DNA of 64,000 nt from Octopus sinensis (GCF_006345805.1 NC_043004.1:82894001-82958000), one strand, 5' to 3'. Shown: positions 1,525-46,575, counted from the stretch's first letter. The notes: generated by a model not told the origin, from the sequence alone. Numbers and translations are program-made.

Positions 1525-2595
1525 CTTTGAATTGATTTGTAATCCGTTGTATATTAATAGTATGCTATAAATTCCATTCAATGATCCGAAAATGATCTGA
1601 AGTGCGTAAATGGTTGGGGTTTGTACCTGCCTCGCAACTTCGTTTACTATAAGGCAACAAATAACCAATGAACTCACAACAGCGATAGCAGATGAATATT
1701 GAAGAACTGCATTCATATATTTTAATAAATCGCAGAGCTTGCCATGATTATTTATTATCTCAGTTAGATCTTCGTTGCAAGTAACTCTTGTATGATTTTC
1801 TTTATATTCGTTCAAAATATTTAGGAACATCTGCGTTATATGTTTAAATTCATTTGTTACAAGTAATAGGAATGTATGAAGACTTACATTCCAAGCTGAT
1901 TGAAGAAAAAAGACCCAGATATTTGTAATACAATTCAAAACTAACATAATATTATAACTGAAAGATTTGTGATTTTCAGTTTGTATAGGATATGTTAATA
2001 CATTAAAAAAATCAAGGTCATGAGGGATAAGTAATGGTAAAGCAATATAGACCACAATCGACAATATAATATTACAACCTATTTCGAATCGAATATTATT
2101 GATTCCGAATTTCCTATATTTATCGATATTCCTTAAACTTTCCATTTGCAATATATATTCACTATATTCGTGCATGAAGAAGCGTATTTTTTCCCGGTTC
2201 CAAATCAAGTTGAGTGTAATCATATCTGGATATATTTTCATAAAAAATGCTGAGCATTTCGCTACAAACTCGTCTGTAGCTGAATACTCTATTATAACAA
2301 AACAAAAGAAACGGACAATATCAAAAACCGGTATTAAATAGAGAAGAGGGCGGCAAAAATAAAGGATTCGTGTTTTAAATCCTGATTGTTTCCAAATTTC
2401 CGCGTCCATTTTTGTAGGAAACTTATCCAAAACCGAAACCTTATTTATAGCTGCCAGCATTTTCGGAAGATGTGTATCGTTTTTTGCTCTTGACTTCCGT
2501 TCATTACCATTTCCCTCCGGGGAATTCTTTCCGACCTTCCTTTTATGGACACGTACCATATTCGGAGAAAGAGAGAATACTTTTTGTGAAAACAT
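1525..2595 (-). CDS. GR/OR-like (7TM ion channel superfamily) receptor exon 1: N-terminus + TM1-TM6, 357 codons, ends at phase-0 donor
   Basis: ATG at 2595; about six hydrophobic segments; shares W..SG.K.R, WNR, EFK, HGKL..LLK..N and GLQ.N with the four paralogs; AAG|GTAAAT donor at 1525/1524. Confidence 0.82.
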
Positions 2596-2597
2596 TC

Positions 2598-2623
2598 TAT
2601 CTATCTATCTATCTATCTATCTA

Positions 2624-2654
<31 letters not shown>

Positions 2655-2689
2655 TTATCTATCTATCTATCTGTCTATCTATCTATCTA

Positions 2690-2776
<87 letters not shown>

Positions 2777-2791
2777 ATATCTATCTATCTA

Positions 2792-2838
<47 letters not shown>

Positions 2839-2859
2839 TATATATATATCTATCTGTCT

Positions 2860-2920
<61 letters not shown>

Positions 2921-2969
2921 TTATCTATCTATCTATCTGTCTATCTATCTATCTACCTATCTATCTATC

Positions 2970-3014
<45 letters not shown>

Positions 3015-3068
3015 GTGTGTATGTGTGTGTGTGCATGTGCGTGTGCGTGTGCATATATGTGTGTGTGT
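2598..3068. repeat. Compound microsatellite (CTAT)n/(TA)n/(TG)n
   Basis: Directly visible; begins 3 nt upstream of the exon 1 ATG. Confidence 0.95.
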
Positions 3069-3809
3069 CCACGTCAAGAAATGACAGAATTTTCAACGTT
3101 CTCTAGATAGACATAAACATAAGCCCCCAAAATGCAGCTTGATGGCTAGTAGAAGTCATAGAACAATATCCAGTATTTGCTAGAGTTCAGTAATACAACA
3201 TATAGTGGAATCTCAAAAAATCATCGCATATTTTATGACGGGGTAGTCACAAACGTTATCTTGAAATAAACTTTGCTTGTATCTCTGGTTTAGTCACTGG
3301 CAATCCTCATCCATTCCCCGTCTTCAGTGTTGTATCGAGTAAAAACAAGGCTGATAGTTATCTGTCTTCTTGCGAATACTTTAAGCTTTTAAAGAGCAGT
3401 AAACAAGAAATGCATGGAAAATAAAGTGTTTTCTGTTACGAAACCGTAAACCCTTCCGAAAGATGATCGAGAATTAATCCGTCGATTATACACATTCATA
3501 TACGTATGCAGAGTGTGTTAATGCGATGTGAAAATTAGCAATCCCAGGTTTCTATAGGAAATGTAGATGTTTCTATAGGAAATGTAGATTATTGGCTATT
3601 TATCTCATGGGAATAGATCAAATTAATGTAGACGCCTGTCATGAGAAACCAATATGATTAAAAAATCGATTAACGTTGTACATTTTTCTTTGGCAATGAG
3701 CTAACTTAGCTCCTTTTATAGAGGCACCACATATAACCATAGAGGTTATATATATGTGTGTGTGTGTATGTATGTGTGTGTATGTGTGTGTGTGTATGTA
3801 TATATATAA

Positions 3810-3851
<42 letters not shown>

Positions 3852-5684
3852 TTCAATTAAAAGGATTCATTAGGACTAGAGGCGCATCAACGTGTTGGAC
3901 TTTATATACAAAAAATTATATATACGCTTGTATGTATGTCAGAAATAAATATCCACACCATACAGTAGAATAGGCAATGTTATGTGTACGACGAGAAAAC
4001 CAAAAGAGACATATGAGTCTGCGTATGTATCTGTAGGTAAATGTATGTGCATATAAATTAATACAAACACATATTTATATAAGCTTTCTGATTAGTAAAT
4101 TCAGTGCACGCCCAATAATTAATGTTCTAACTATTTAGATAAGTAACCAAAATAATTGAAGGAACATCAATTAATATTTAAGTGTTCTGCAATCAATGGA
4201 ATAAATATATGTTGATAATATAGGTGTGGTATAAAAATATATAAAAAAATATATATAATCAATTATCCATCCTGTTATTTCTTTCATTATTCAGTTATCA
4301 ATGGATTACCTCCTAATAAAGTTTTGCTCGTGTGTTGTAGACGTCCTCCTCCTGTTTCGAAGATCAAAGTCAATCTTTTCAGATATAATGTATGCGAGAC
4401 TCTGTATTTTATGCTATATTTAGAAAAGGAGATGGGTGTATCCCATGATATTTTTAACGGCATCCAATGGCTAGTTAAGGGATGCTAAACTTTATGCATG
4501 AAATAATATAGATTTCATTGAAGTATGAAGTACAGCTGTTAAACCAGAATTTGGACGAAATCTGCCAACAAAACTCTAATAAAAGAACATGTGTGAATAT
4601 AAACAGATTTCTCTCTGTATAAGAAAACAATAACATACAAACAAGATGCCATCTACGCAAGATTAGAAGGAAACTAATTTGAAGTTTAAAAATCATGATA
4701 AATTCAAAGTGTAGTTCTACAGTATACTGAAGAAAGGGTGGACTGAAAAACACATACTGTACTCAATAACCTGCAAGATTCGACTGATAATATGTAGAAT
4801 CAATTGGTGTTTAATATAATGCGCTTACAAAACGTTGATTTCATGTGTGAGAGTTATATTAGTAGGATGTCAAATTTATATATATATTATATATATATAT
4901 ATAATATATATATAAATGAAAGAATGGAGTTGAATGACGAATTAACAAAATTCCTTTATTTTCGACATATGTTTCGAATTATCCATAATAAGATAATTCA
5001 TTCAACTACTCAATTATATATATATATTTATATATATATATATAGTTCATCCACGGAAGAGGGTGAATATATTCAAGCTCGACAGTTAGTCAATCACGTG
5101 TCTTCCTAGACGTCATTACAAATTTGAATGCAGTCCAGTTCTAAGAGCTACGTTTGGTTATGAAATATTAAAAATTTCGTTCAAAACAGAAAAGGTAAAT
5201 TAAGTAACGACAGCGAAAAGTTTGTTTTGAATATGAATATCCTAATTATTTTGAAAGTAAAGAACAGGTTAATTGGAACTATACAAATGCACTCATTAAG
5301 CAGACTCTGTGCTAAACACGTTAAAATATATTAACTTCAAAATAATAGCCTGACTTTAGGTGAGGAAGTTTTAGTTCAACCCTGAAATTGAATTTCAATC
5401 AAAATATCCCAACAATTTTTAAAGCAAACTCCACAATATTTGTCTCCAGATGCAAGAGTTGAATGAGAGGAATCTTGAGGAATCTTCTGGTGAAAACAAT
5501 TGTTTTATATTTCTTTTATTATTCAAAATTCAGATAAGCAAATTCATAGGAGACGAAATAACGCTAAGCATTTCTATCGTCGTGCTAACGATTTTGCCAG
5601 CATGACGCCTTCCCGGAATCATAATAATGATATTTGTATGTATAGTATTATAATATAAACAATATTAACAAACACAATACTTAC

Positions 5685-6761
5685 ATTATTATTGAGCCGT
5701 AGTCCTCTATATATCAACCATAAACAATAAATAAATGATGGCAATCCGAAGATGAGTTGTATAATGTAGATATCATCTGTTAATTCTTGATTTGCTAATT
5801 CATAGGCAAGAAGACAGGTACTGAGAAGACATGTCATTGTCGTAACAACACAAGCTGTTTGAAATAACGCGTTTATCAATTTTAATAAATGGCAAAGTTT
5901 TCCATGAGTTTTAATAATCAGATAGATTGTTTTACAGTCGTGGGTGCGAGCGTCAAATATTCCAGCATTTTCATCTTGCATTTTCATTAACATATTTTCA
6001 AATTTCTTTGACAAGCATTTAAACTCATCTGTAATAACTAATACGAGTATCTGGATCATGGTAGTGTTAGGAATTAAGAGGATTAATGTCAGTAAATTTG
6101 ATGTCAAATTCATTACCAAACCAAGGATGTAGCCATTACTGTCAGTTGTCAGCGGAAAAACAATGACACTTAGAAAAACGTTCGGTTCCTTTAATAACAG
6201 CGGCAATATTATTTGTACCACAAAACAGAGAGGTACACCAATAATCAGCTGCAGTACCATATCTAACATTACATATTTGTTATATCTAGCCATGTATTCG
6301 GTACTTTGGTTTATTGGAATATAATTCCCGAATTCGTGTATTAGCTGATTGATGATATACCTATTCCATATCATAGTTGCTGCAACTAGACATGGGAACG
6401 CCTTTAGTAATAGAAGAGAGGCGTTTGCAACAACACGGGCGTTATTCAGAGTTGAAACTTGTATTAAAAACCACAGAAATTTTATAGTATCACTAATAAC
6501 AAAGAAATAAATAATAGACAGCAAGCAATAAAAAAGGCGTTCCTTTAATCCAGACGATCCCCAAATTTCTTTATTCATTTTAGAAGAACAGCACAAAATT
6601 GAAAACTGTTTAATTTTCTTGAGGAATGAATTCAGATCTGAATCTTTTATTGGGTGTGATTTGTATTCATCTATATGTACATTAAACGACTCCCAAGGAC
6701 CGAGGATTGAACGACACGGCTCTATAGTTGAAGTAAACGTTTGGAAACCCTGTAAGGCCAT
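5685..6761 (-). CDS. GR/OR-like receptor exon 2: N-terminus + TM1-TM6, 359 codons
   Basis: First real ATG at 6761 (MALQGF...; the track start at 6863 is GTG); intact frame; motifs WGSSGLKER, IWNR, PINQSTEYMARY, DEFKCLSKK, HGKLCHLLKLIN; AAT|GTAAGT donor at 5685/5684. Confidence 0.85.
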
Positions 6762-7198
6762 GATGCATTTGTACAAGTTCAAAGTGAATTCGACGCACAG
6801 TTCAGTACATTTAGCATCACTGCCTTCTGTCTGTAGTAGTTTGTATATTACAGCACTCAACACAAGTAATAATATTTATACTAAGTCCATAATGACTAAA
6901 TGTTCCCGACGTAAATTAATTTTACATTTGCTGCATAAAGCTTATAAAGCTTACTTTTGGTATAGTAATTAACGTATGCACAATATAAATAACACTTGCT
7001 GTAATAAATTCTTCATAAATAATTTTTATTGTTTGTAATAGCGGCAGTAGTATAAACAGTTAAGCTTTGAAAAGCAAGTCAAAATTTATAGAAAATATAT
7101 ATTTAAGAATTATGATTGAACAAACAAGCGAAGTCTGTTAACATTGTTATAAGGATAATTTCTTTGTTCAGCGTGTCAATAACATCACTTCCGCATAT

Positions 7199-7242
<44 letters not shown>

Positions 7243-7589
7243 CTATGTAGAGCTAATGCTTTTTTCTTTGTGTACATAGTTGTGATATGTACGAGCATAC
7301 GTGTTGTAATTGTGCATTCAAATGTGCATTATGCAAAGCAGATATTCCGGTTGAGTGAAATTCTTAATTTTAATAGATAGAAATGCATTAACTCTATGGA
7401 CAATAATAAGCGGTAACTCTAGAGACGAATAATATCCACAGACCGCTGAAACCAGCTTAACATGTGTATCTACTAAAGAACACAATATATAAACAAAAAG
7501 CTGCTTAAAATTGAATGGTGTATTAAATTTAATCCGTTTATACACGTAGCACAGAATAAAAATTGAGCCATTACACTCTTTCTTTTACT

Positions 7590-7783
7590 CTTTTACTTGT
7601 TTTAGTCATGTGACTGTGGCCATGCTGGAGCACCACCTTTAGTCGAGCAAATCGACCCCAGGACTTATTCTTTGTAAGCCTAGTGCTTATTTTATCGCTC
7701 TCTTTTACCGAACCGCTAGGTTACGCGGACGTAAACACACGAGCATCGGTTGTCAAGCGATGTGGGGCGTGGGACAAACATAT

Positions 7784-7843
<60 letters not shown>

Positions 7844-8040
7844 TATATAGATATATATATATATATATATACATATATACGACTGGCTTCTTTCAGTTTC
7901 CGTCTACCAAATCCACTCACAAAGATTTGGTCGGCCCGAGGCTATAGTAGAAGACACTTGCCCAAGGTACGACGCAATGGGATTGAACTCGGAACCATGT
8001 GGTTCGTAAACAAGCTACTTACCACAAGCATTAACCAGCA
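7590..8040 (+). mobile_element. SINE (Octopus OK-like) with internal (TA)n
   Basis: cagtcat.tgactg.ggccatgctggagcacc...aaatcgacccc...gacgtaaacacacc...ccgaggctatagtagaagacacttgccc; near-identical copies at 12.1, 14.6 and 42.4 kb. Confidence 0.8.
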
Positions 8041-8373
8041 CAAATATTGAAACAATATTCTAAAATTCAAAATGTAGCGCTAAGATTATAGTAAGCAAAT
8101 ACAGAAAGTATCAATATACTTTAATATTCTAAGAGCGGATACTAGGTTTCAAATTCAGCAATCACTCATCTGAAACAGTTATTACCTTCTACGAGTTATT
8201 ACCTTTGGATGCATACGACAAATGTCTTGCTACAAGTAATAACGGTTTCGAATTTTCACAAAAGATCAGCAATTTCGCTGAGGGGAGTTATTCAATTACA
8301 AAGATATTGGTTCATTTATTATAAAAGAAGGGAAATAAAATATATGCGTATAATAATAATAATAACAATAATG

Positions 8374-8411
<38 letters not shown>

Positions 8412-8496
8412 TAATAATAATAATAATGATGATGATGATGATGATGATAATAATAATAATAATGATAATAATAATAATGATAATAATAATGATAAT

Positions 8497-8558
<62 letters not shown>

Positions 8559-8560
<2 letters not shown>

Positions 8561-8912
8561 CCGGCAGATGACAACGTGTCTCTAAAAGAAATGGAGAAAC
8601 TCTCAAAATACAAAGACCTGGAAATAGAGGTAACTAGAATGTGGAATCTAAAAACAGAAACAATTCCTATCATAGTAGGTGCATTAGGCATGATAAAAAA
8701 ATATTCAGACAAATACATAACAAAAACACCAGGACTTACAAACACATATAACATACAGAAAATTGCACTACTAGGCACTGCACACATCCTACGCAGAACA
8801 CTTTCCATACAATAACCATCAGAGCATCACAACAAATCACAGCACATACCCAAGGCACACAGAGCTGCGCTCGGTAGTGAAGTGAAAGCACGCTATAAAA
8901 ATAAAACTACTG
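8559..8912 (+). mobile_element. 5'-truncated R4/Dong-type LINE 3' end (subfamily A) in (AAT)n
   Basis: Encodes DDNVSLKEMEKLSKYKDLEIEVTRMWNLK...GTAHILRRTLSIQ, nearly identical to 51650-52002; (AAT)n on both sides. Confidence 0.88.
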
Positions 8913-8922
8913 AATAATAATG

Positions 8923-8996
<74 letters not shown>

Positions 8997-8998
<2 letters not shown>

Positions 8999-9179
8999 TG
9001 GGCCCCACCTGCAAGGTCATGTGCTGTTTATCTTGATATGCGATCCCCATGTCGCGCACATATGGTTGTGATGCATGTGCCTGGCGTACCCTTATCAGGC
9101 GGGTAGTCATGATGGGTATATTGGGCTTCGTATATTTTATCCCAGTGTCACTTTGATGGCATGAACTGCTCTCTCACTC

Positions 9180-9247
<68 letters not shown>

Positions 9248-9803
9248 ATGCTCTGATGCAGTACCAGGCAGTGGGTCTCATGGCTTCTGATCTTAACTGA
9301 TTGGAAGTGTTATCATATACATTGTTTTGTCTTGGTATAAAAGATGGGCTACAGCAAATATTCTGCTCAATACCATAGATTTGCTTGTCAGTTGTTTGAC
9401 CTCAACCAGTTGAGCCTGTCCCTTAGTCGCTGACGATATGCGCATCTCTGATCACGAGCAAAAGTAGTGGGGGAGCATCATAGCCATGTGTTGAGAGAGA
9501 TTCTTTGGGGTTTGAATAATTCACCTCTGGAAACATGGGTGGCTTCTTCAACATCCTTAAACAACCCTTATTCAGGGACCTTTTGAGCGGGATGGGCTAC
9601 TCAACCTGAAGAAAATTCTAACTGGTCCCCACCTGAAAGGTCACGTGCTTTTTATCTTGATATGAGATCACCATGTCGCGTACATATGGTTGTGATGCAT
9701 GTGCCTGGTGTACCCTTATCAGGCGGGTAGTCATGATGGGTATATTGGGCTTCGTATATTTTACCCCAGTGTCACTTTGATGGCATGCTCTGCTCGCTCA
9801 CTC
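8997..9803 (+). mobile_element. AAT-flanked ~560-bp non-coding element: 3' partial copy (8997-9179) and full copy (9247-9803)
   Basis: ctgatgcagtaccaggcagtgg...aactgggccccacctgcaaggtc...ctgctctctcactc then (AAT)n; at least nine related copies in the window. Confidence 0.8.
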
Positions 9804-19308: not shown

Positions 19309-20391
19309 ACTGAAATTTAACTGTAGTCCTTTGAATATTACTACCAGGCATGTAAGTGCTGTTAATATTCCGCTCACAATTTGCAATATGTAACCTTTTC
19401 CAGCCACTAAGTTATTTGCTACTTCATACGCTATAACACAACAAATAACCATAAATGTAAATACTGAAATACCGCCTCCGCCTTTAGATATAGCGTTCAC
19501 AAATTTCAGCAAATGACAAAGTCTTCCATGCTGGTAAATAATCTGATAAATAATTTTATTGAAATGATTACGCGAGACAAATATTCTTCTATTTTCCCCG
19601 TGCATATTCCGCAAGACTTTTTCAAGTTTATCTGACAAACATTTAAACTCATCTGTCATATATTTGAATAACACAACATTCATTACATTGTTTGGCATCG
19701 TTAGTAGGTTTGCCAATATTTGTGTCATGAAATTTATTAACAAAACAAATTGAAATAAGCCGCTTTCACGTGTTAGTGGGAAACCCATCACATCAAAAAA
19801 ATATTCCGGTTCTTTTAACACTATTGGCAATATAAGGTAGATTGTAAGACACAGCACTAGAATTATACAAATATTTAATGCGATTTGTAACATTCCTATT
19901 TTATTATATTTAGCCATATGTTTATCACTTTGGTTTACTGGAATATAACTAGGAAATTCTTGGAGAAACTGAATGACAAATTGTCTATTCCAAATTATAT
20001 TTATTGCAAGCATATTGGGAAATGTCTTCATGTATAGAAGAAGACTTTTTGCCAAAAGTGGCCCGGGTTTTTCACTGGAGTATTTTGCTAAGATAAACCA
20101 TGGCAAACGTATGAAATCAACAATAATCACGAAATACAACAAAAGTAGCAAACAATACAGAGTCCGTTTTTTTAATCCAGATGATTTCCATATGTTGATG
20201 TTCATTTTAGAAGGAAACCTAAGAAATATTGAAAGTTTTTCTACTTTCTCCAGCAATATATTTAGAGCAGTGTCCTTAACAGCATTTAATTTGTATTGGG
20301 TGGTATTTATATCCAGAGGATCATATATGTTAACGATAGTGTGGTACGTTGCCTTACTTGGAAGGGCAGTTGATGAAGAGAGCAAAGCCAT
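19309..20391 (-). CDS. GR/OR-like receptor exon 3: N-terminus + TM1-TM6, 361 codons
   Basis: ATG at 20391 (MALLSS...); intact; WKSSGLKKR, IWNR, PVNQSDKHMAKYNK, DEFKCLSDKLE, HGRLCHLLKFVN, GLQLNFS; AGT|GTAAGT donor at 19309/19308. Confidence 0.87.
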
Positions 20392-27329: not shown

Positions 27330-28323
27330 CGAAACAAATGATATTCTGAAGGAACAAGGTCGGAAAAATAAGGCGGGTGAGGCATTTTTCCTAAACAAGC
27401 TCTTCAATCTTCAGTGATGTGATCTGTGCAGTGTGGGGTTGCGCATTGTCCTGATGAAACATGATTCCTTTTCGATTCACTAAAGCGGGTTTTTTTCTTC
27501 AAAGCTTGGTTCAGTAGACTTGAGCATTGATTGTTGCATTAGGTGGTAACAAATTGAATTACACCTTTGCAATCCCACTAGATAGAGAGAAGAACCTTTT
27601 TTCCTATGATGTTCCCTTCTCGGTTGTGGTTGAGTTTTTCCCCTTTTACCAAGCCACTGTTTACGACGTTTAGTATTTCGATAGACGATCCACATTTCGT
27701 CACCGGTCACAAGTCTATTTAAAAAGAGTGAAATGAGTTCGCAAGAATGGAGAGAAAAGCAGATGTCAACACGGAATTTGCAATTGCTTTTGGACAATTC
27801 ATGAGGCATCTATCTTCTAAGTGTAGGAAACTTTCCAAGTTGTTGAAAATGACGATGAATAGTTGTATCGTTTGAACTAAGATTTATTGCCAATTCTTCA
27901 ACTGATAACACAAGATGTTTTTGAAGTAATGCCTCAAGGAGCTTATCATCAAACTCAACTGGACGTCCTGTTCGATCTTTATCTGCAAGGCTGATATCTC
28001 CATTTCTGAATTTTGCAAGCCATCTTCTGCAAGTTCTCTCATTCAAGCATTCTATGTTTCTAGTCGCTTCGGCTGCAGATTCCCATTTTGTACTCATAAA
28101 GCATTTTCTGTCTCAAATGCTCTTTGGATACTTCCATGTTAGAAAGGGTTTTAATCAAAGAAATTTTAATTCTATTATTCTGTAAAATAATATTTAATTA
28201 ATTTAAATGTACACAAATGCATAAAAATATTTTTAAAATTCCATTAGACATTCTAAAATACTATTAAATTTTATTCATTTTTAAAAAAGGTAAAATCGGA
28301 CAGAATTTATGGGTTGACCTGTA
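27330..28323 (-). mobile_element. Degenerate mariner transposon (one TIR retained)
   Basis: AAEATRNI...RRWLAKFRNGDISLADKDRTGRP, PHELS, LVTGDEMWIVYRN; TIR-like tttatgggttgacctgta at about 28306-28323. Confidence 0.85.
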
Positions 28324-29764: not shown

Positions 29765-30847
29765 ACTAAAATTTAGCTGTAGTCCTTTATATGTATACAG
29801 CACGAATGCTAGTGCTGTTAGTACTCCGCACACAATTTGCAATATGTAGCCATTTCCTGTGACTAAGTTATTTGCTACTGCATATAGTATAACACAACAG
29901 ATTATAAGGAATGAGAATATTGAAATAGCGGCTCCGCCTTGAAATACACCATTCATATATTTCAGCAAATTGCGAAGTCTTCCATGCTGGTTAATAATCT
30001 CATATAGGATTTTACTACAATGACCACGTGTAACAAATATTCCTGTGTGTTCCCGGTTCATTTTGTGCATGACATTTTCAAGTTTATCCGACAAACGTTT
30101 AAATTCATTTATCATAAGTAATATTACTATAAAGAACATTGTATTGTTTAGCATCGTCAGGAGATGAACTAATAAATGTGTTATGAAATTTATTGCCAAA
30201 ATACATTCAAATAACTCGCTCTTACGTGTTAATGGGAAACCCAACACATCAAGAAAATATTCCGGTTCTTTTAAAACAATTGGCAACAAAATTTGAACTG
30301 TAAAACACATTACGACACCTAAAAATGTATGGAATTTGATTTGAAACATTCCCATTTTATTATATTTAGCCATATGTTTATCACTTTGGTTTACTGGAAT
30401 ATAACTACGAAATTCTCGTAGAAACTGAATGATAAATTGTCTGTTCCAAAGTATATTTACTGCAAGCATACTTGGAAGTGTCTTCACGAATAGAAGGGAA
30501 CTTTTTGCCAACAGAGGCCCAGTATTCTCACTGGTGTATTTTGCTACAATAAACCATGGCAAACGAATAAACTCAATAATAAACACGAAATACAATAGAA
30601 GAAGTAAACAATACAAAATGCGTTTTTTTAATCCAGACGATTTCCATGCGTCGATATTCATTTTAGAAGGAAACCTAAGAAATATTGAAAGCTGTTCAAC
30701 TTTATCCACAAAGATATTTAGAGTCGTCAGTTTAATAGGCTTTGATTTGTAGTCTTCCATATTTATATTAAATGGATTAAATATATCAACAACAGCGTGA
30801 GATGGTTCCATATTTGTAAGAACAGTTGGTAAAGAGAGCAACGGCAT
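29765..30847 (-). CDS. GR/OR-like receptor exon 4: N-terminus + TM1-TM6, 361 codons
   Basis: First real ATG at 30847 (MPLLSL...; the track start is TTG); intact; closest paralog of exon 3 (LSIFLRFPSKMNI, PVNQSDKHMAKYNK, LPIVLKEPEYF); AGT|GTAAGT donor at 29765/29764. Confidence 0.87.
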
Positions 30848-37463: not shown

Positions 37464-38794
37464 CTGCTGTCCGTAAATATGTGCATGTAATTTTAATTAT
37501 GAAGATATTTTCAAATTTTTGTGTAAGACCTGTTATTTCAACTCTAAAACTCAACTGGTACTTATTTTATCCATACCGTAAGGATGAAATGCAAAGTCGA
37601 CCTCAGCGATATTTAAAATTTAAGATGGACTAAATGCCGCTAAGGATTTCGTCTACCAGTTCACCGCCTTAACTATAAATAAAAGGATAAACTACTTACT
37701 GTATGTAAGCAGTTAGCCTTGAACTTGCATGACTTGCACAACAAGATATAGCAACATGTGCCAAAGATCGTTTGAAATTTGATATGAAATATTCAATATT
37801 AGTTATATCGTGTCATATATGTGGTGCTTTGATTTAATGAAATATAACTACCAAATTATTATAGAAACTAATTGGCATCAGGCTTAGTCCAAACTAAATT
37901 TATTGCACACATAACAGTGAGCACCTTTACCGACAAATCAGAACTTTTCGCCTATAGAAGCGCAGAGCCTTTAATAGAATAATTTGTTAATATAAACCAT
38001 GGGAGGTATACTCTTTCAATGGTAAAAAATAAAATAAATGAGGAGGACACAGAAAAGTAATCGGTTGTTCAAACCAGACAAGTGACAACTTCCTATAGTA
38101 ATTTCAGGAGAAACATTGTACAGAATCGAAAGCTGTCAAATTATCTTTAGGGATGAATTAAGAATACTATCGTTCATTGAATATGACTTGTATTTCTCGA
38201 TATTTATATAAACCAAATGATAGTTGTCGATAATATTATGTGATTATTCTCAATTTGAAAGAAACTTTAGGACGTTGGTAAATATTCCAAGGCCATTAGA
38301 CTTTTATGTATGCACAAGTTCTGTTAATTGCACACTTCTGTAGATATAGCTTTGTTTAATGCTTGATTAGATAATTGCAAGCAGATTACTCATTACATCA
38401 GGCAACACTAATAGGAGTATATATACTAAGTGATTAATTGTTAACTTTCCTCGCAGCAGTTTATAACATCGCCCATTTGGTACACATACTAAAGCGTTAG
38501 TTAGTAATTAAATAATACATTACTGAAATTACGTTTAATATAATTAGCTCCTAATCAGATGAGTTACTATGAGTGTGACCATGTTTTCGTTATACAATAT
38601 GAAGGTGTTACTCCTACAAGAAGGAAGACCACTTACCAAGTTTTGTTAACTAATTGCTTCTGTCTAAAGCAAAAGTGGAAAAAATGCATAGACATATAAT
38701 TACTTGGATATGCACACTCACACACATGCATATATATAATTTCCACACAAACACACACACACATGCACACACACAAACGCACGCACATACACAC

Positions 38795-38825
<31 letters not shown>

Positions 38826-38949
38826 AATATATATATATATATAAATGTGAGGTGTTGGAAGACCCAAAGATTGGCAGGTAATGCTATGTAAGTGCTAAGA
38901 ACAGAACGTAGTTAAATTCTTGGTTCGATAGTGATACGATTAAGGAGAC

Positions 38950-39450
38950 TAATGAGGGTTTTGTATTAGCATGCATGTATATATTACACTATATGAGATA
39001 ACAAGGCAAAGGCTGTGATAAGTTTTCAGGACATTTATAAGGAAAGATATATCGATATTGTCTTACAGCTGCTTTTGGGATATTATGGATATCTCCTCAT
39101 TAGAGACGATATGAGATGGTTAATTAGAGGTAAAAATTTGAGTTCGAAATAAGGAATTATTAGAGAAAAGGGAGGGAATATAGAGGGAAAAAAGAGCATG
39201 AAAGTAGAAATAAAATATCAAACATTGAATTTGCAGTTCCATTATTCGAGTAAAGTGGTGTATAGAAGTGGTAAAAAAGTTTCCTGTACATGGTGTCTAA
39301 GTTCCTGTAGTAGTTCATGTTTAGTCATTTCAAAGTATAGAGCCGTAGATTCTGTGTTGCACATTCGAAGGTGATTTGTGGTGTGAATGAAAATTTAAGG
39401 ATGTTTTGGTAGTATTTGTGGGTACAAGGAGGAGGAGAGATGTGTATGAT
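38950..39450 (-). mobile_element. Penelope-like 3' relic with degenerate hammerhead
   Basis: Minus strand atcgtct-ctaatga-stem-aaaagc-agct-gta-agacaat at 39110-39057; upstream GIY-YIG-like remnants are weak. Confidence 0.45.
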
Positions 39451-40532
39451 TAGAATGAGGAAGAGAAAATGGGAGGAAGAAAGGGAGAAACAAAGAAAAG
39501 TGAGAAAAGAAATAAATGAAAACTAAAAAGTGAACGAAAAGTGATGAATGAAAAAAATAAGTGAAGAAATGGTGAAAAAAGTGAGAAAAGGAGTGTTAGA
39601 TGGTGGTCAAGATAATGGGAGGTGAGGAAGGGAGGGGAGTAGAAGAGAGAGAGAGGCAATTATGCAGGTAAAATTGATAGATGAGTGTGCGGGGCCTTAA
39701 ATTGTTCTCGCAACCAAGATATCAGCTCGAGAAATGAGATTAGGGCTTTATTTAAGAGAATTGACGATATTGAAGAATAATTCTTAGAGATATCAAACTG
39801 AAAGAATTGAGAATTCTGCTTATAAGGAAAAGTGGAACAAAGTGATGACATCACCTGTAGAACTTCAAAGCGGTGGTTTAACTTTAGTCGTAAAACGGGT
39901 TAGAATTCGATCGATAATGCATTCACCAATTCGACTCAAGTGTGATTTACAACTTTCTATATTATTTTCCATGCGACTATATATATTAACAGTGATAGTC
40001 CCTTCCAGTTCTTCTTCACTAATACTAATTTGACCTCCCCAGAGGTAAATTCCAACCGCAGTGTAGATAGAAAAGCTTGCAATTTTCGGGCTTTTCAATT
40101 CTGTTTTCTTGGAAGTTTCTGCCTGCATAAAAATTTAGTACCGTGATATAGAACCACCCTGCTACCAAGGAAAGATCTATATCCGTGGCACTGTTGATTT
40201 CAAGCATCGCTACTCCACACATGTGAGTTCGTTCTCCAATCCAGACTCTAGATTATGTACCTACGTATCAGCTTATATACACAACCTCACAACTTAAATT
40301 ATGTTTAAGGGAATCGCAAAAAATACCACTCCAGTACAACCCCCCTTTAATTAATAAATTATCATATGCAATACTTTCTTGTTTACTCAATATTCACCCC
40401 TTTCATTAAGTCTACATAATATAAATATAAAGATCAGTCTAGCAACTAATACCACACTTCTTATTTCTATTCCTTCCCATTGCTACACACACTGACACAC
40501 AGACAGACAGACAGACAAACATCCAATGTTTT

Positions 40533-40577
<45 letters not shown>

Positions 40578-40732
40578 CATTATTTACATTTAACGGATAT
40601 TTGTCCTCAACTTGTTCCTTGTTAGCACAACGTTTCGGCTGATATACCCTCCAGCTTTCATAAGGGTTCTTGGGAGAATTTCGAATCTGGGTTCTCATTC
40701 CTAAGGTATTTTTCGATATTATTATTATTATC

Positions 40733-40763
<31 letters not shown>

Positions 40764-41089
40764 TAGTAGTAGTAGTAGTAGTAGTAGTAGTAGCCACAGT
40801 AGTAGTATCATCATTCGGGTCACTGCCTGGAATCGAACTCGGAATCTTGGGGTTAGTAGTCCCCTCTCTTAACCACTACACCGTGGGTAATTATGGAGTG
40901 AACGTTAGGGCTTATAAATCTAATATCTTCCAAGCCTTCCTTAATACCGGAGAATATTAGATTTAAAAGCCCTACAAATTCACTAACTGCATCAACTTGC
41001 AGTAAAACCAATAGTAATTTTCCTTCATACTTATTCTTAGTGCAATTTTTGTAGAGTGCAGTTTGATTTTAACAGTTTGTTTATCAAAT

Positions 41090-42099
41090 CACAAAGAAGA
41101 ATATTCTGCTTGTTGTGCTTTATGAGTTCAATAAAGGCAACAAGGCAACGGAGTATGCGAGATATATTAATGCAGTAGATGTGTGTCGGGCAATAAGCTT
41201 AAGCCAGTGTGAACGGTCGTTCCAGAAACTCCGAACAGGAAACAACAGACTTAAAGATGAGCCTCGTCCTAGATAATTTGTTGAGCTCGACAAATCCTGG
41301 TGGAACAAAATCCCATCACAACTATTTAGGAACTAGTAGAGATGCTTGAATTTATTCATTGAACCAATCATCGACACCTGCATGCCAGTGGAAAAGTCAT
41401 GAAATTGGGTCAATGGGTTCCTCACAAACTTTCCGTGTCTAGTCACGCACAGTGTGTGAATGTATGCTCACCTTTGCTGTCACCTCTCATGAATGAACCA
41501 TCTTTACACCGAATAGTGACTGATGACGAGAAATGGGTTCTCTATAAAAATGTGAAGCGCCAAAGACAGTGGTTAGGGAACGGGGAAACACCGGCACCCC
41601 AGGCTGAAGGTTTTCACGGAATTAAGGTGTTTTCTATTTGGTGGGCTATGAAAGATTTAGTCCACCTTGAACATTTAAACCCAGGCCAAACGATGAACAT
41701 GATAGCAAATGAGATCTACTTCAAGCAGCTTGAACGGCTTCAGTCACTGCTAGTAGAAAAACGACCATCTTGGGTTTGAAACTGGATCAGTTTAAATGGG
41801 TAACAATTCTCCACCCACCACATTCACCGGACATAGCCCCCATCTAATTATCATTTATTCAGCAGTTTTCAAAATTGGACAGAAAAAATATGAATTCAGT
41901 AGATGAGGCTAGAACAATACTAGAAGAGTATTTTTCGTCACCCACAAGTGAAATTTGGAAGCGGAGCCTTGCAATTCTACCAGATAGATGGAAGAAAATT
42001 TTGTAAAATCAAGAAGCGTAGAATAAAAAAGAACTTGGTTTATCTTTATTTTGAAAAAATAAAAGAAGTATAAAACAACCGTATTATTTATGGGATGAC

Positions 42100-42105
<6 letters not shown>
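41090..42105 (+). mobile_element. Degenerate mariner transposon
   Basis: KLGQWVPHKLS, HRIVTDDEKWVLYKN, HPPHSPDIAP; right TIR ttatttatgggatgacctaata followed by (TA)n; left TIR not found. Confidence 0.85.
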
Positions 42106-42165
<60 letters not shown>

Positions 42166-42444
42166 CCTATTATATACATTTTTATTATTATTTTTGCAAT
42201 TTACTTAATCTTTACATTTTATTGCTATTTTAATTTTAACTTTTCTATTATATATAATTTTCTAGATGGTGTAATTTAATTATTCATGTTGAATTGATAA
42301 AAGGGTTTTTTTTCTAATTTTTTCATATATACACATATATATATATATATATGCATCAATACCTATCATTTTATCTATCTATCTACCTATCTAGCCGTGT
42401 GCTTATTTATCTATGTATTTATCTATTTTTTTCTCTTTTGCTCT

Positions 42445-42860
42445 TTTGATGGTTTCAGTCATTTGACTGTGCCGCGTTTACGTCGAGCAAATCGACCCCA
42501 GAGCTTATTCTTTGTAAGTCCAGTACTTATTCTATCGGTCTCTTTTGCCGAACCTCTAAGCTACGGGGGTGTAAACACACCAGCATCGGTTGTCAAGCTT
42601 TGTTGGGTGGGTGGGTGTCAAACACAGACACACAAACATATACACACACACACACACATATTTATATATAGAGATAGATATATAGATATATATATACATA
42701 CATACATATATACGACGGCATTCTTTCAGTTTACGTCTACCAAATTCTCTCACAAGGCTTTGGTCGGACCGAGGCTATAGTAGAAGACATTTGACTAAGG
42801 TGCCACGCAGTGGTTGGTAAGCAAGGTACTTACCACACACCCACTCCCACGCCTATCTGT
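42445..42860 (+). mobile_element. SINE (OK-like)
   Basis: Homologous to 7590-8040. Confidence 0.78.
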
Positions 42861-43273
42861 ATGTTTACGCTGGTGTTATAACTTCGTATCCATAATAGAT
42901 AAAGATGTAGCTGTCTTGAGCATGTGTTTAATTGCATAATTATTCATTAATTAGCGATCCCGCTGATTATCTACAGATTCTGATTTAGCTTATTTGACAA
43001 TTAATAATGAAACTCGAGTTCGAGATTAACTTATTCTTTTTTTGTTCATTTTAGTGTTATAACAGCATACCTCATGAATTATTTTTCATGCTTTGGGTTT
43101 TAAATGCCCTTTCTAGCATGTAAGAACTCCTTTCAAGGGTCCTCTTTCTGTGTATCAAAATGTTATATACACCCTTATATTTTTTAGAATATAGTATGTC
43201 TTATGACTTTTATTTAAGCACGCTAACCACTGGCAATAAATTATTTTAATGTATTACACTCATGTTTATTACA

Positions 43274-43309
<36 letters not shown>

Positions 43310-43537
43310 AGCAACGAGACACAACAAGGTGGTAGATGAATGTTACTACTAGTTTAACCCCGGGCGGATTCTCCACCAGCTCGTTTCCGGTGCAAGAACC
43401 GCACTCTTTATGAAAACTACATCGCTAACAGGGGGAGCGACCACCTGCCACCCTCCAACATCTGACAGGAACGCCGGACCGGCAGGTTTCGAGCTACGTC
43501 TCTCTCTCTTTCACACACACATAAATATGTATATATT

Positions 43538-43583
<46 letters not shown>

Positions 43584-43604
43584 ATATTATATATATATAT
43601 ATAT

Positions 43605-43652
<48 letters not shown>

Positions 43653-43659
<7 letters not shown>

Positions 43660-44390
43660 ACAATGTAGTGAGAATGTTGGATGATTATATATAGGTTTAT
43701 TTACATTTTTAGCGCTTTCTTCCTTTATCGGGTTTATCGAAAAAGTGATTTATAGTAAGTTTGCTTGGCCTTTTTTTATTGAAGAATAAAAGTGATGAAG
43801 CTTTAGAAAGAGAGGGGGATGGAGGGAGATATGGGAACGAGAGTAACAAATTAGAAAGGAAATTGCAAGGGTGAGAGTAGGAGGAGGAGGAGAGAGTGGG
43901 TGGTAGTGAAGATAGAGAAGAGAAAAGGAAGTATGAGAGTTTTGATGGTTTGGAGCGGAAGAGAAAGGAAAGAAAAAAAGTTTGTGAGGGAGGAGAACAT
44001 GTGGTTTTGCATCACTATGGTCGAAAACAACATATTCTATCAAACTAGTTTAACCGCACTGATAGAACAGCCACGCATCCCCTTCCTCCCTGTCAAACTT
44101 TTTCTTCTTTCTTTCCCCTTTATCTGCAAATCACCAAAACACTCCTTTCTTCACTATCACCCACTCTTAACCCTGCTCCTTCTTTTCTAATTTGTTTCTC
44201 TCTTTCTCCGCCTCTATCTCTCTTTTTCTCAAGCATCATCACTTATAATTTTATACAAAAAGGCCAAGTAAACTTACTATAAACCACTTTTTTGATAACT
44301 CCGATACAGGAAGAAAGTTCTAAATATGTAAATAACAATATTTATAATCATCCAACATTCTGACTACCTTCTTATTCTCAATATACAATA
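43653..44390. repeat. Long imperfect inverted repeat (about 350-bp arms, short spacer)
   Basis: gaatgttggatgattata...tatagtaagttt.cttggcc...aacaaattagaaa recurs in reverse complement at 44190-44390; flanked by (GA)n on the left and (TC)n on the right. Confidence 0.85.
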
Positions 44391-44423
44391 TCTGTACATC
44401 ATTTCAATCTCTGTCTCTGTCTC

Positions 44424-44465
<42 letters not shown>

Positions 44466-44494
44466 CATATATATATAATATATTTACTAGCTGA

Positions 44495-45120
44495 CGTACC
44501 CGGAAATTTCCAGGAAAGCAGGGCGTTTCCTTTGCTTTTGTTCTCATAATTGTTTTGCTAATCCCATAACAACAATACAAATACTTGGCCCTTGAAACGG
44601 GTTTTAAGGGCTTTCCCAGAATATATAGAACTTAGGAGGAAATATTAATAAATTATGTATGCTAAAATCGTGAAGCATGTTATGTAATAACAGGCTAATC
44701 ACTTACAATTCAAAGTAAATAAATCTGAAAAGGGCTTTTGACCGTTCCCAGAGAATATTACCTTCAGGGGCGCTAGTGTTGGTATATTCGCGAATAAGTC
44801 ACTAACCAAAATAAGTGGATCTATTTCTTAGGAAATAAGCATACTCAATCTGATTTACACCACACGATTTAAGGAAATGAATAGGTTATTTCCCATGTCT
44901 GTTAAGATCTGCGTCAATGGGGTATTTTCTTTGGATGTTAAAATAAAATATATTAGATATATATAAAGATCTATTCCAAGAGCCCTATTCTCGATTATTT
45001 TAACAATCTGAGCATGTCATGTGGTTTCCAGGCATAAGTTCTAGTCACTTGTCAAGTTTCATCAACATCGATAAAACGATGCTGGTGGAGTTGGCTAACA
45101 ACTCTACAAACACACACACC
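44495..45120 (+). mobile_element. Helitron/HINE-like non-autonomous element
   Basis: Starts tactagctgacgtacccgg; ends near ...acaaacacacacacctacagtcagcattt. Confidence 0.4.
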
Positions 45121-45489
45121 TACAGTCAGCATTTCCCACATATGTAGTAGATACATTTAGATAAATATTTAGAAACATAGACAGATAGATTGTTGCATAG
45201 ATGTAAATCTATAATTAGAAATAGATGCAGTTGTGTGCATATATATTTATGCGTGTGTCGATGTAAGTATGAGTGTAGGTATAAATATGTGTAAGTATTG
45301 AAGTGTGTAAATTTACATATGTAAAATACGATTTGCGACGCTGTATCTTCTCTGTGCTATGGAGATGAAAGTATATATGAACATATAAAGACATAACGAA
45401 CCTATGTTGAAATCATCTCAAAGCGTTGTCTGAGATTCAAATATGTAATTTTAGTGATAATAAAAATTTAATTAAAACATAATTCTTAC

Positions 45490-46575
45490 GTGGAAATTTA
45501 GCTGTAGACCTTTATGTATTGCCGGCAGACAGTATACAATCGATATTATACCATAGATAAATTGTATCATGTATCCATTTTCTTTAACTAAGTTATTTGC
45601 TATTCCATATGCCATAAGACAGCAATTAAAAAATAAAAATATACATGTAACTGTATATGTACTTTGAGATATTCCATTGATAAATTTGAGCAAGTCACGC
45701 AGAATCCCATGTTGATTAATTATCTGATATAATATTTTCTGATAATTAGTACGTACAACAGATAATTCCGTATGTTCGGTGCGCATGTTTTGAAAGACTT
45801 TTTCAAGTTTCTCCGACAAATATTTAAACTCATCTGTTAAAATTGAAAGTGATACGTAGAAGAGTATGCTATTCGATGCTATCAGTATATAAGTGAATAC
45901 ACTTGTCATGCAGTTTAATGCCAGGATATATCCGTAAAATTCGCTCTTATTTGATACTGGAAATGCTAAAGCCTCTAGGAAATGAATCTTCTCCTTTAAC
46001 AAAATTGGTAAAAGACCTTGGGTGACAAAAGGTAGCAATACACTTAAACATATTTGAATTTTGATATAAAGCATTCCAAATTGTTTGTATTTAGCCATAT
46101 ATTCAGTATTTTGGTTCATCGGAATGTAACTACTGAATTCTTGTATTAACTTATTGAAAAGCTGCCTTTTCCAGATTATATTTATTGCATTCAAACCGGG
46201 AAAGAATTTGAGAGATAGAAGAAAACTTTTTATTAATAGAGGTCGAGTGTCTTCAGTTGAATAATTTGCCAAAATATACCAAGGTAAACGTACAATTTCA
46301 CTTGTAACAATAATGTAGAGCAAAAAATGGACACAGTACAAAATTCGTTTTTTCACTCCTGATGATTTCCAAGTTTTTATATTTATTTCAGAAGGTAATC
46401 TACACAGAATTGTAAACCATTGAATTTTCTCCAAGAATGAATTAAGAACAGTGTATTTTATAGCTTTTGGCTGATAGCCGTCGATATCTATCTCCACTGA
46501 CTGATATGTGTCGAAGACTGAATGAAGTGATTCCATGTTTGAAGAAAACTGTGGATAAAGATTTCTAAAAGTCAT
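45490..46575 (-). CDS. GR/OR-like receptor exon 5: N-terminus + TM1-TM6, 362 codons
   Basis: First real ATG at 46575 (MTFRNL...; the track start is GTG); intact; WKSSGVKKR, PMNQNTEYMAKY, DEFKYLSEKLE, HGILRDLLKFIN, GLQLNFH; CAC|GTAAGA donor at 45490/45489. Confidence 0.87.

What the first reader, a model, noticed from the sequence alone, without database searches (positions are those of the whole stretch)
1525..46575. Putative variable-exon array: five TM1-6 receptor exons ending on the same phase-0 donor, probably spliced to shared C-terminal exon(s)
Seen in sequence: five minus-strand paralogous exons of 357, 359, 361, 361 and 362 codons. Each has its own ATG, and each ends at the identical homologous codon after G-L-[QR]-[LI]-N-x-x on an in-frame GT donor (AAG|GTAAAT 1524, AAT|GTAAGT 5684, AGT|GTAAGT 19308, AGT|GTAAGT 29764, CAC|GTAAGA 45489). 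The residues past each donor are unrelated read-through. I found no segment homologous between the gaps that could encode TM7, even in the short 3-kb gap between exons 2 and 1. Established: Drosophila Gr28b, Gr39a and Gr23a splice alternative long N-terminal exons to shared C-terminal exons. In OR/GR cryo-EM structures the ligand pocket is built from helices within S1-S6, while S7 lines the pore and contributes to the anchor. Inference: this is one alternatively spliced locus with five or more ligand-binding modules sharing one pore module located left of nt 1, a variable/constant design in a probable mollusc that I do not know to have been described.
Basis: partly seen in the sequence, partly recalled or inferred. 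Interest (0 to 1): 0.95.

Follow-up and report, generated by a model that had tools for sequence, protein, structure and literature searches.

The report
Octopus taste-receptor gene with alternative first exons
The five long exons are alternative first exons of one Octopus sinensis gustatory-receptor-like gene, spliced to three shared short exons just left of the window that encode the pore helix; insects use the same design, and RefSeq already models two other isoforms of this gene.

Summary
Five minus-strand ORFs of 357-362 codons each have an ATG and end on a phase-0 GT donor at the homologous codon.

The window is Octopus sinensis chromosome contig C8:82,894,001-82,958,000. Three short phase-0 exons (A 23 aa, B 30 aa, C 17 aa plus stop) lie 4.0, 5.6 and 9.1 kb downstream of exon 1. 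They encode the S6-S7 loop and TM7 (TYSIVAYQT).

I assembled 218 kb of contiguous sequence. A profile for exon B finds only two copies in it: this set and that of the neighbouring gene LOC118764606. None lies in the window's gaps.

Joined to A-B-C, all five exons pass the Pfam 7tm_7 threshold through TM7. Alone, none does.

The array is larger than the finding states: 13 intact variable exons and about 7 decayed ones spread over 153 kb.

RefSeq LOC118764605 isoforms X1 and X2 join variable exons 8 and 13 to A-B-C, splicing across the entire window. O. bimaculoides has the same junction.

No transcript evidence exists for the five window exons. Their intact frames, dN/dS of 0.35-0.49 and conserved donors argue that they are used.

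The design is the one long known from insect Gr28b, Gr39a and Blattella Gr60a-m, so this is a new member of a known kind.

The parts
1..1524 (-). In-window start of the intron from the V1 donor to constant exon A. The three constant exons lie OUTSIDE the window, to its left. Exon A is at window -2516..-2448 (C8:82,891,484-82,891,552; AHQLVDHIYAMPLHDLSHEAIIK). Exon B is at -4132..-4043 (C8:82,889,868-82,889,957; LSFFLHRLTSEQIGISIGGCFVINPASVLT). Exon C plus stop is at -7674..-7621 (C8:82,886,326-82,886,379; LIGSIITYSIVAYQTRS*).
   Evidence: All junctions are phase 0 with AG acceptors and GT donors. Exon B scores 67.5 bits on the exon-B profile, and 54.3 bits on a profile built without it. The sequence is identical in RefSeq X1 and X2. 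There is no A, B or C homologue in 1-1524.
1525..2595 (-). Variable first exon V1 (357 codons, TM1-6), donor AAG|GTAAAT, 3,972 nt upstream of the exon A acceptor
   Evidence: V1+ABC scores 37.9 bits on Pfam 7tm_7. A (GATA)n array at 2596-2984 abuts its ATG.
5685..6761 (-). Variable first exon V2 (359 codons), donor AAT|GTAAGT
   Evidence: V2+ABC scores 33.5 bits on 7tm_7. TATAAATA at -119 from the ATG.
19309..20391 (-). Variable first exon V3 (361 codons), donor AGT|GTAAGT
   Evidence: V3+ABC scores 26.9 bits on 7tm_7. The closest copy in another octopus (L031) is intact, keeps a GTAAGT donor, and gives dN/dS 0.49.
29765..30847 (-). Variable first exon V4 (361 codons), donor AGT|GTAAGT
   Evidence: V4+ABC scores 41.2 bits on 7tm_7 and 41.0 on 7tm_6. 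The closest copy in another octopus (L032) gives dN/dS 0.39 and keeps the donor.
37748..38264 (-). Decayed variable exon (covers only positions 9-182 of the family, 9 stop codons)
45490..46575 (-). Variable first exon V5 (362 codons), donor CAC|GTAAGA
   Evidence: V5+ABC scores 32.5 bits on 7tm_7. TATAAATG at -121 from the ATG.
46576..64000 (-). Intronic stretch between V5 and V6, filled with LINE-like debris on the + strand. The array continues OUTSIDE the window to the right, in window coordinates: V6 64372-65454; V7 87486-88382 (N-truncated, status uncertain); V8 96388-97440 (the first exon of RefSeq X1); V9 106661-107713; V10 109853-110905; V11 114032-115084; V12 132133-133185; V13 153571-154626 (the first coding exon of RefSeq X2). 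About six further decayed copies lie among them.
   Evidence: exons and donors; RefSeq X1 = V8+ABC, X2 = V13+ABC; RVT_1 hits in 49177-58303.

Best explanation
The window lies inside one very large gene of Octopus sinensis, RefSeq LOC118764605. The gene encodes gustatory-receptor-like (GRL) proteins of the insect OR/GR seven-transmembrane ion-channel superfamily.

Thirteen intact, tandem, same-strand first exons are spread over 153 kb. Each carries its own ATG and encodes the N-terminus plus TM1-TM6, which is the part that builds the ligand pocket in solved OR/GR structures.

Each variable exon ends at the same phase-0 donor. Each is spliced, as an alternative to the others, to a single set of three short phase-0 exons (A, B, C; 70 aa). 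These encode the S6-S7 loop and TM7, the anchor-contributing and pore-lining helix. The five exons of the finding are the five nearest to the constant exons.

Shown here: the exons, donors and acceptors; the uniqueness of the constant set; family membership of the joined products; and annotated junctions for V8 and V13 in O. sinensis and for V13 in O. bimaculoides.

Inferred: V1-V5 are spliced in the same way. Each variable exon is transcribed from its own promoter, so the cap-proximal donor is the only one with an exon upstream of it, and downstream variable exons are removed as intron because they have no acceptor. The isoforms differ in ligand specificity while sharing the pore and part of the assembly interface.
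For: 1. Five intact paralogous exons with identical phase-0 donors.

2. One collinear A-B-C exon set lies 4-9 kb downstream of V1. It was found with the C-terminus of a distant paralogue, and its boundaries were read from the sequence.

3. No other A, B or C copy lies in the window or in 218 kb. A nine-sequence exon-B profile gives 67.5 and 60.3 bits for the two real sets and at most 9.9 bits for everything else. A control profile built without either set still finds both, at 54 and 43 bits.

4. A genome-wide search finds no minus-strand exon B between 82,889,966 and 83,067,865, yet it detects the private C-termini of plus-strand neighbours at 40% identity.

5. All five V+ABC products pass the Pfam 7tm_7 gathering score, with matches running to profile position 365 of 370. 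Without ABC, none hits 7tm_7.

6. RefSeq XP_036361414.1 equals V8+ABC exactly, and XP_036361415.1 is V13+ABC. Both introns span the window.

7. O. bimaculoides XP_052825885.1 ('isoform X1') joins the V13 orthologue to ABC. Its variable part is 78% identical and its constant part 97%.

8. The neighbouring LOC118764606 model skips a paralogous long exon to reach its own A-B-C set.

9. dN/dS is 0.35-0.49. Donors are kept in another species' copies. Truly dead copies nearby carry stops and frameshifts.

10. The AF2 model of X1 retrieves only insect OR, Orco and GR structures as its top 18 hits.

11. The same design is documented in insects (PMC6175461, PMC2204066).
Against: No RNA data could be consulted, so no junction read links V1-V5 to exon A.

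RefSeq carries only two isoforms, neither using a window exon. I could not inspect the RNA-seq support of those Gnomon models.

The upstream region of V1 is a 389-bp (GATA)n array, and V4 also has microsatellites upstream. Their promoters may therefore be compromised.

Separate promoters rest only on a TATAAAT at about -110 to -121 in V2, V5 and V6, which is weak evidence in AT-rich DNA.

The structure model has low confidence: mean pLDDT 58, and below 50 over most of the constant region.
Confidence: 0.85

Rival explanations
1. Dead or silent exons. Only some first exons, such as V8 and V13, are used. The five window exons are untranscribed relics lying in the long intron of LOC118764605.
For: RefSeq has no isoform using V1-V5. 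Decayed copies do exist in the array. Microsatellites abut V1 and lie upstream of V4.
Against: All five keep 357-362 open codons (P about 3e-9 each by chance), an ATG and a consensus donor. dN/dS is 0.35-0.49 rather than about 1. The closest copies in another octopus are also intact with GTAAGT donors. Real relics in the same array carry 3-9 stops. Chemoreceptor transcripts are usually too rare to be captured by routine annotation (general knowledge).
Confidence: 0.08
2. Five independent genes, each with its own private TM7 exon or exons hidden in its gap.
For: This is the default organisation for most GR/GRL genes. Plus-strand neighbours at C8:82,786,380-82,864,901 do have their own C-terminal coding segments.
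Against: tblastn with two divergent A/B/C sets and a profile search with a leave-out control find nothing in any gap. The best off-target hit, 9.9 bits at window 27702-27734, is a mariner-type transposase relic. The distant paralogue's exon B is detected at E 2e-7, so closer private copies would not be missed.
Confidence: 0.02
3. Truncated six-helix products. Transcripts read through the donors to the nearby in-frame stops and give proteins without TM7.
For: Each frame stays open for 3-33 codons beyond the donor.
Against: The tails are unrelated in sequence and length. The GT donor is conserved at one phase-0 position in 13 paralogues that have diverged to as little as 26% identity, and in another species. 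TM7 forms the pore in every solved family member (established knowledge). Pfam recognises the products only when ABC is added.
Confidence: 0.03

Closest known systems
Insect GR (and some OR) genes with tandem long first exons spliced to three shared short exons: Drosophila Gr28b, Gr39a and Gr23a; Blattella germanica Gr60a-m (13 isoforms)
   Same: Same protein superfamily (Pfam 7tm_7). Long first exons each have their own ATG and encode TM1-6. There are three short shared 3' exons, and all three introns are phase 0 at the positions held to be ancestral for the superfamily. Pseudogenised isoform exons are interspersed. At 13 intact variable exons the array equals the largest cockroach case (PMC6175461, PMC2204066).
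   Different: The host is a cephalopod mollusc, not an arthropod. The scale is far larger: 4-156 kb from donor to acceptor, with LINE and mariner debris and microsatellites in the introns. The TM7 motif ends Q-T instead of Q-F. No expression or ligand data exist. I could not check whether Robertson 2015 (not held in the paper library) already noted alternative splicing of mollusc GRLs.
GRL genes of non-arthropod animals (Robertson 2015 and Saina et al. 2015, as cited in PMC7746228 and PMC6175461)
   Same: [quoted passage not shown]
   Different: In the papers I could read they are described as ordinary separate genes. Here many first exons share one 3' module.
Vertebrate clustered protocadherins and UGT1A (variable first exons with their own promoters plus constant exons)
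   Same: Works alike: a tandem array of large variable first exons, one downstream constant module, and long-range cis-splicing from the cap-proximal donor.
   Different: Unrelated proteins. In those systems promoter choice is demonstrated; here it is only inferred. This is an analogy, not family membership.
RefSeq LOC118764605 (XP_036361414.1, XP_036361415.1) and O. bimaculoides LOC106880487 (XP_052825885.1)
   Same: This is the very gene. The models use the constant exons found here with the junctions I predicted independently.
   Different: They are named 'uncharacterized protein'. Only two of the 13 first exons are modelled, and none of the five in the window. UniProt A0A0L8FXQ7 (60 aa) consists of the constant exons alone.

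Membership tests
GR/GRL family (Pfam 7tm_7; insect OR/GR 7TM ion-channel superfamily) | Significant match to the family profile over the whole length | tested here: met
   All five V+ABC products score 26.9-41.2 bits against a gathering score of 26.6, reaching profile position 365 of 370. V3 only just passes at 26.9. RefSeq X1 and X2 carry precomputed PF08395 hits.
GR/GRL family (Pfam 7tm_7; insect OR/GR 7TM ion-channel superfamily) | TM7 motif T-Y-h-h-h-h-h-Q-F | tested here: inconclusive
   Exon C reads T-Y-S-I-V-A-Y-Q-T, so T, Y and Q are present and F is replaced by T. The paralogue P0018 has TYVIVVLQT. Three of the four motif positions are kept.
GR/GRL family (Pfam 7tm_7; insect OR/GR 7TM ion-channel superfamily) | [quoted passage not shown] | tested here: met
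   The V|A, A|B and B|C junctions are all phase 0 with GT..AG. The same three junctions occur in XP_036361416.1. The criterion is as stated in PMC6175461 and PMC7746228.
GR/GRL family (Pfam 7tm_7; insect OR/GR 7TM ion-channel superfamily) | Seven TM helices in the OR/GR fold | tested here: met
   The AF2 model of X1 is all-helical. The top 18 Foldseek PDB hits are exclusively insect OR, Orco and GR structures (probability 0.98-1.0, TM 0.39-0.63), and the next hits have probability at most 0.3. Caveat: mean pLDDT is 58, and it is low in the constant region.
GR/GRL family (Pfam 7tm_7; insect OR/GR 7TM ion-channel superfamily) | Intracellular N-terminus; tetrameric ligand-gated cation channel | not testable with these tools
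   Needs topology mapping, electrophysiology or cryo-EM.
Alternatively spliced GR locus of the Gr28b/Gr39a/BgerGr60 type | Tandem, same-strand paralogous long first exons, each with an ATG and a donor at the homologous phase-0 site | tested here: met
   13 intact exons, five of them in the window.
Alternatively spliced GR locus of the Gr28b/Gr39a/BgerGr60 type | A single shared set of 3' exons downstream of the array and no private copies | tested here: met
   (profile search with leave-out control).
Alternatively spliced GR locus of the Gr28b/Gr39a/BgerGr60 type | Transcripts that join different first exons to the same shared exons | tested here: inconclusive
   Annotated for V8 and V13 (RefSeq X1 and X2) and for the V13 orthologue in O. 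bimaculoides. These are Gnomon models whose read support I could not see. Nothing exists for V1-V5.
Alternatively spliced GR locus of the Gr28b/Gr39a/BgerGr60 type | A separate promoter for each first exon | not testable with these tools
   The only hint is a TATAAAT at -110 to -121 in V2, V5 and V6, in homologous alignment columns. CAGE or 5' RACE is needed.

The most novel reading that the evidence does not exclude
Cephalopods evolved, independently of arthropods, a protocadherin-like promoter-choice system for 7TM ion-channel chemoreceptors. Each of the 13 first exons would be chosen in different sensory cells, for example in suckers or the olfactory organ. All isoforms share one pore and anchor helix and so could co-assemble. 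The design would be general for octopus GRLs, since at least three loci on this chromosome look alike. This would be the first documented case outside arthropods.
Probability: 0.3. Interest if true: 0.6.

Novelty: new member of a known kind. Interest (0 to 1): 0.45.

Why it matters
Octopus chemosensation is currently explained mainly by nicotinic-receptor-derived chemotactile receptors (PMC11526382). GR-like channels in cephalopods are essentially unstudied.

This locus alone could add up to 13 receptors that annotation pipelines mostly miss. Two of the 13 are modelled and called 'uncharacterized'. In O. bimaculoides one UniProt entry is only the constant module.

It also shows that the 'variable ligand module, constant pore module' gene design of insect GRs occurs in Lophotrochozoa. 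The ancestral trio of phase-0 introns presumably makes that design easy to evolve.

In practice, GRL counts in molluscs based on gene models are likely to be underestimates. Curators should look for orphan long exons that end in G-L-x-x-N-x-x|GTAAGT.

Tried and rejected
- A regex for [ST][YF]x5Q[FYLMIV] on all frames found no TM7 exon, because the octopus motif ends in Q-T.
- An all-against-all blastp of stop-to-stop fragments between the gaps was swamped by transposon and low-complexity hits and was abandoned.
- The first protein-database search with V4 found only unspliced genomic ORFs of another octopus from Logan contigs, with no transcripts.
- Exact look-ups of P0018, P0024, P0025 and P0026 returned nothing, because records of the window's own genome appear to be left out. 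No transcript contig could therefore be obtained.
The region was fetched in smaller batches instead.
- The best off-target exon-B profile hit (window 27702-27734) was checked and is a mariner-like transposase relic.
- phmmer of X1 against PDB sequences found nothing. Only the fold comparison links it to solved OR/GR structures.
- Robertson 2015 could not be read. Full-text searches for alternative splicing of mollusc or cephalopod GRLs found no paper.
Those features are now described in the text of the flanking in-window parts.


Full report
**Observation.** The window carries five long minus-strand ORFs. Trimmed at the in-frame GT that follows the conserved G-L-[QR]-[LI]-N-x-x, they are 357, 359, 361, 361 and 362 codons long. 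Their coordinates are 1525-2595, 5685-6761, 19309-20391, 29765-30847 and 45490-46575. The five are paralogues, 28-63% identical in pairs. Alignment stops at the donor, and the read-through tails are unrelated. The stop frequency on this strand is 0.053 per codon, so an open frame of 360 codons has a chance probability of about 3e-9. A sixth, decayed copy lies at 37748-38264 with nine stops.

**Identity and place.** Of the five exons taken alone, only V4 reaches a Pfam threshold (7tm_6, 29.3 bits). The window is C8:82,894,001-82,958,000 of a 2.7-Gb genome. That genome is Octopus sinensis: XP_036361416.1 of that species sits on a contig of the same length, 107,269,306 bases. A search of the genome shows that the five exons belong to a much longer same-strand series.

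**Finding the missing TM7.** A profile of the five exons was searched against 1.8 billion representative proteins. It found one spliced relative, XP_036361416.1 (P0018, 408 aa). Its last 74 residues look like a GR C-terminus...GISVGGFFVIRPSSILTIFGSLFTYVIVVLQT. Using that tail in tblastn against the window and its left flank gave three collinear minus-strand hits, all in the 10 kb left of the window and none inside it.

Reading the DNA gives three exons:
- Exon A: AHQLVDHIYAMPLHDLSHEAIIK, with a TTTAG|G acceptor after a long T-rich tract and an AAG|GTTCGT donor.
- Exon B: LSFFLHRLTSEQIGISIGGCFVINPASVLT, with a CTGCAG|C acceptor and an ACG|GTAAAA donor.
- Exon C: LIGSIITYSIVAYQTRS followed by a stop, with a TTGCAG|C acceptor.

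All three junctions are phase 0. The acceptors of A, B and C lie 4.0, 5.6 and 9.1 kb downstream of V1. This is the trio of phase-0 introns regarded as ancestral for the GR/GRL superfamily (PMC6175461, PMC7746228).

tblastn with A, B and C found nothing else in the window or in the flanks of 30 paralogous loci. I then assembled 218 kb of contiguous sequence, C8:82,874,001-83,092,000. Within it only two A-B-C sets exist: the one above, and a second at 83,060,342-83,071,030 that belongs to XP_036361416.1.

A nine-sequence profile of exon B scores 67.5 and 60.3 bits on these two sets and at most 9.9 bits elsewhere. A control profile built only from seven other loci of the chromosome still recovers both sets, at 54 and 43 bits. 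A diverged private copy would therefore have been seen. The 9.9-bit hit, at window 27702-27734, is a mariner-type transposase relic. Genome-wide, the constant-region query detects the C-termini of plus-strand neighbours at about 40% identity. It finds no minus-strand copy between 82,889,966 and 83,067,865.

**Extent of the array.** A profile of the long exon maps 13 intact copies between 82,895,525 and 83,048,626. V1-V5 are in the window and V6-V13 lie to its right. About seven decayed copies, with stops, frameshifts or truncations, are interspersed. V7 lacks the usual N-terminus, so its status is uncertain. All 13 end at the homologous phase-0 GT, and 11 of them read GTAAGTAT. V9-V11 are 93-96% identical, which points to recent duplications, whereas V1 and V13 are only 26-36% identical to the others.

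**Do the pieces make a receptor?** Each of V1-V5 joined conceptually to A-B-C passes the Pfam 7tm_7 gathering score of 26.6. The scores are 37.9, 33.5, 26.9, 41.2 and 32.5 bits, and the matches run to profile position 365 of 370. Without A-B-C none hits 7tm_7. Exon C carries T-Y-x5-Q of the TM7 motif, with T in place of the final F.

An AlphaFold2 model of RefSeq isoform X1, built from a nine-sequence alignment, has low confidence (mean pLDDT 58, pTM 0.52). Even so, its 18 best PDB matches are all insect OR, Orco and GR structures (probability 0.98-1.0, TM 0.39-0.63). The next matches are unrelated, with probability at most 0.3.

**Evidence for the splicing itself.** Searching the protein database with only the 70 constant residues returned two RefSeq proteins of this genome with 100% identity: XP_036361414.1 and XP_036361415.1, which are LOC118764605 isoforms X1 and X2. 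X1 is letter for letter my predicted V8+ABC (421 aa). X2 is V13+ABC, starting 19 codons downstream of the first in-frame ATG. Their first introns are 99 and 156 kb long and span the whole window.

In O. bimaculoides, XP_052825885.1 (LOC106880487 'isoform X1') joins the V13 orthologue to the same constant exons. Its variable part is 78% identical and its constant part 97%. UniProt A0A0L8FXQ7 is the constant module alone.

The neighbouring gene has the same design on a small scale. The XP_036361416.1 model joins the long exon at 83,087,112-83,088,122 to its own A-B-C set, skipping a paralogous long exon at 83,073,852-83,074,820. That skipped exon has a GC donor, CAAAAT|GCAAGT.

These are computational RefSeq models, and I could not see their read support. 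For V1-V5 there is no annotated isoform and no transcript that I could reach.

**Are V1-V5 alive?** Several observations indicate they are under purifying selection:
- The frames are open and the donors are consensus.
- dN/dS is 0.49 for V3 against V4.
- dN/dS is 0.49 and 0.39 against the closest copies from another octopus species (genomic Logan contigs), which are themselves intact.
- Those copies keep GTAAGT at the same codon.

Genuinely dead copies in the same array are riddled with stops. This argues for purifying selection on the exons as coding, spliced units.

Weak hints of separate promoters exist. TATAAAT lies at -110 to -121 from the ATG in V2, V5 and V6, in homologous alignment columns. 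On the other side, a 389-bp (GATA)n array abuts the ATG of V1 and microsatellites lie upstream of V4. Those two may therefore be weakly expressed or silent.

**Mechanism (inferred).** Transcription would start at one variable exon. Its donor is then the cap-proximal 5' splice site. Downstream variable exons have donors but no acceptors, so they are removed with the intron. The first available acceptor is that of exon A.

The product has a private TM1-6 module and a common loop plus TM7. In solved OR/GR tetramers, S7b lines the pore and the intracellular part of S7 contributes to the anchor (established from the structures listed). All isoforms would therefore share the pore helix and part of the assembly interface.

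[quoted passage not shown] Drosophila Gr39a has four to five large exons and three small conserved ones (PMC2204066). Functionally it resembles vertebrate clustered protocadherins and UGT1A.

What is new is the host, a cephalopod and hence a lophotrochozoan. Also new are the scale (up to 156 kb) and the fact that 11 of the 13 first exons, including all five in the window, are unannotated. I found no paper describing alternatively spliced GRLs in molluscs, but Robertson 2015 is not in the library. I file it as a new member of a known kind.

**Verdict.** The result is a sound and useful annotation finding of moderate interest (0.45).

Noticed in passing
window 2596-2984: A (TCTA/GATA)n microsatellite of about 98 units abuts the ATG of V1 directly. 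(TA)n, (TG)n and (GATA)n runs also lie about 110 nt and further upstream of V4. These may have displaced the promoters of these two exons.
   Followed up: partly
window 37748-38264 (-): A decayed copy of the variable exon, covering only family positions 9-182, with nine stop codons.
   Followed up: yes
window 49177-51351, 55927-58303, 62676-63482 (+): Fragmented LINE-like retrotransposon ORFs (Pfam RVT_1 and zf-RVT hits) lie in the intron between V5 and V6, on the opposite strand.
   Followed up: partly
window ~27600-27800 (-): A mariner-type transposase relic (...FLNRLVTGDEMWIVYRNTKRRKQW...). It was the best false hit of the exon-B profile.
   Followed up: yes
C8:83,060,342-83,088,122 (window 166342-194122), loci L048-L051: The neighbouring gene LOC118764606 (XP_036361416.1) has the same design with two long exons and its own A-B-C set. 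The annotated model skips the proximal long exon, whose donor is GC (CAAAAT|GCAAGT).
   Followed up: partly
C8:82,458,451-82,489,361 (outside the window): Four same-strand long exons (at 82,464,396, 82,478,415, 82,484,650 and 82,488,339) lie upstream of a single exon-B match at 82,458,451. This may be a third locus of the same kind.
   Followed up: no
L053-L058 (C8:82,786,380; 82,806,706; 82,831,680; 82,864,758 on +; 83,106,063; 83,173,935 on -): Six nearly identical exon-B copies (ILVFLNRLTTESHGIDVGGCFVITPSSTLT) on both strands, some inside open frames of 165-172 aa. This looks like a different, recently expanded GRL subfamily with another gene structure.
   Followed up: no
window 153571-154626 (V13, outside the window): RefSeq isoform X2 starts at an internal Met (MENTSLLL), 19 codons downstream of the first in-frame ATG. 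An AG lies just before it (TCCATAG|ATATG), so a 5' leader exon spliced into V13 is possible.
   Followed up: no
window 6880 (V2), 46696 (V5), 65564 (V6): TATAAAT lies at -119, -121 and -110 from the ATG, in homologous alignment columns, although synonymous divergence between these exons is at or near saturation (dS 0.9-1.4 among V2-V5; V6 not measured). These are candidate private TATA boxes.
   Followed up: partly
L031-L036 (Logan contigs, SRR11869384-94): Genomic contigs of another octopus species carry intact copies closest to V3 and V4 (68-70% aa identity). The species was not identified.
   Followed up: partly
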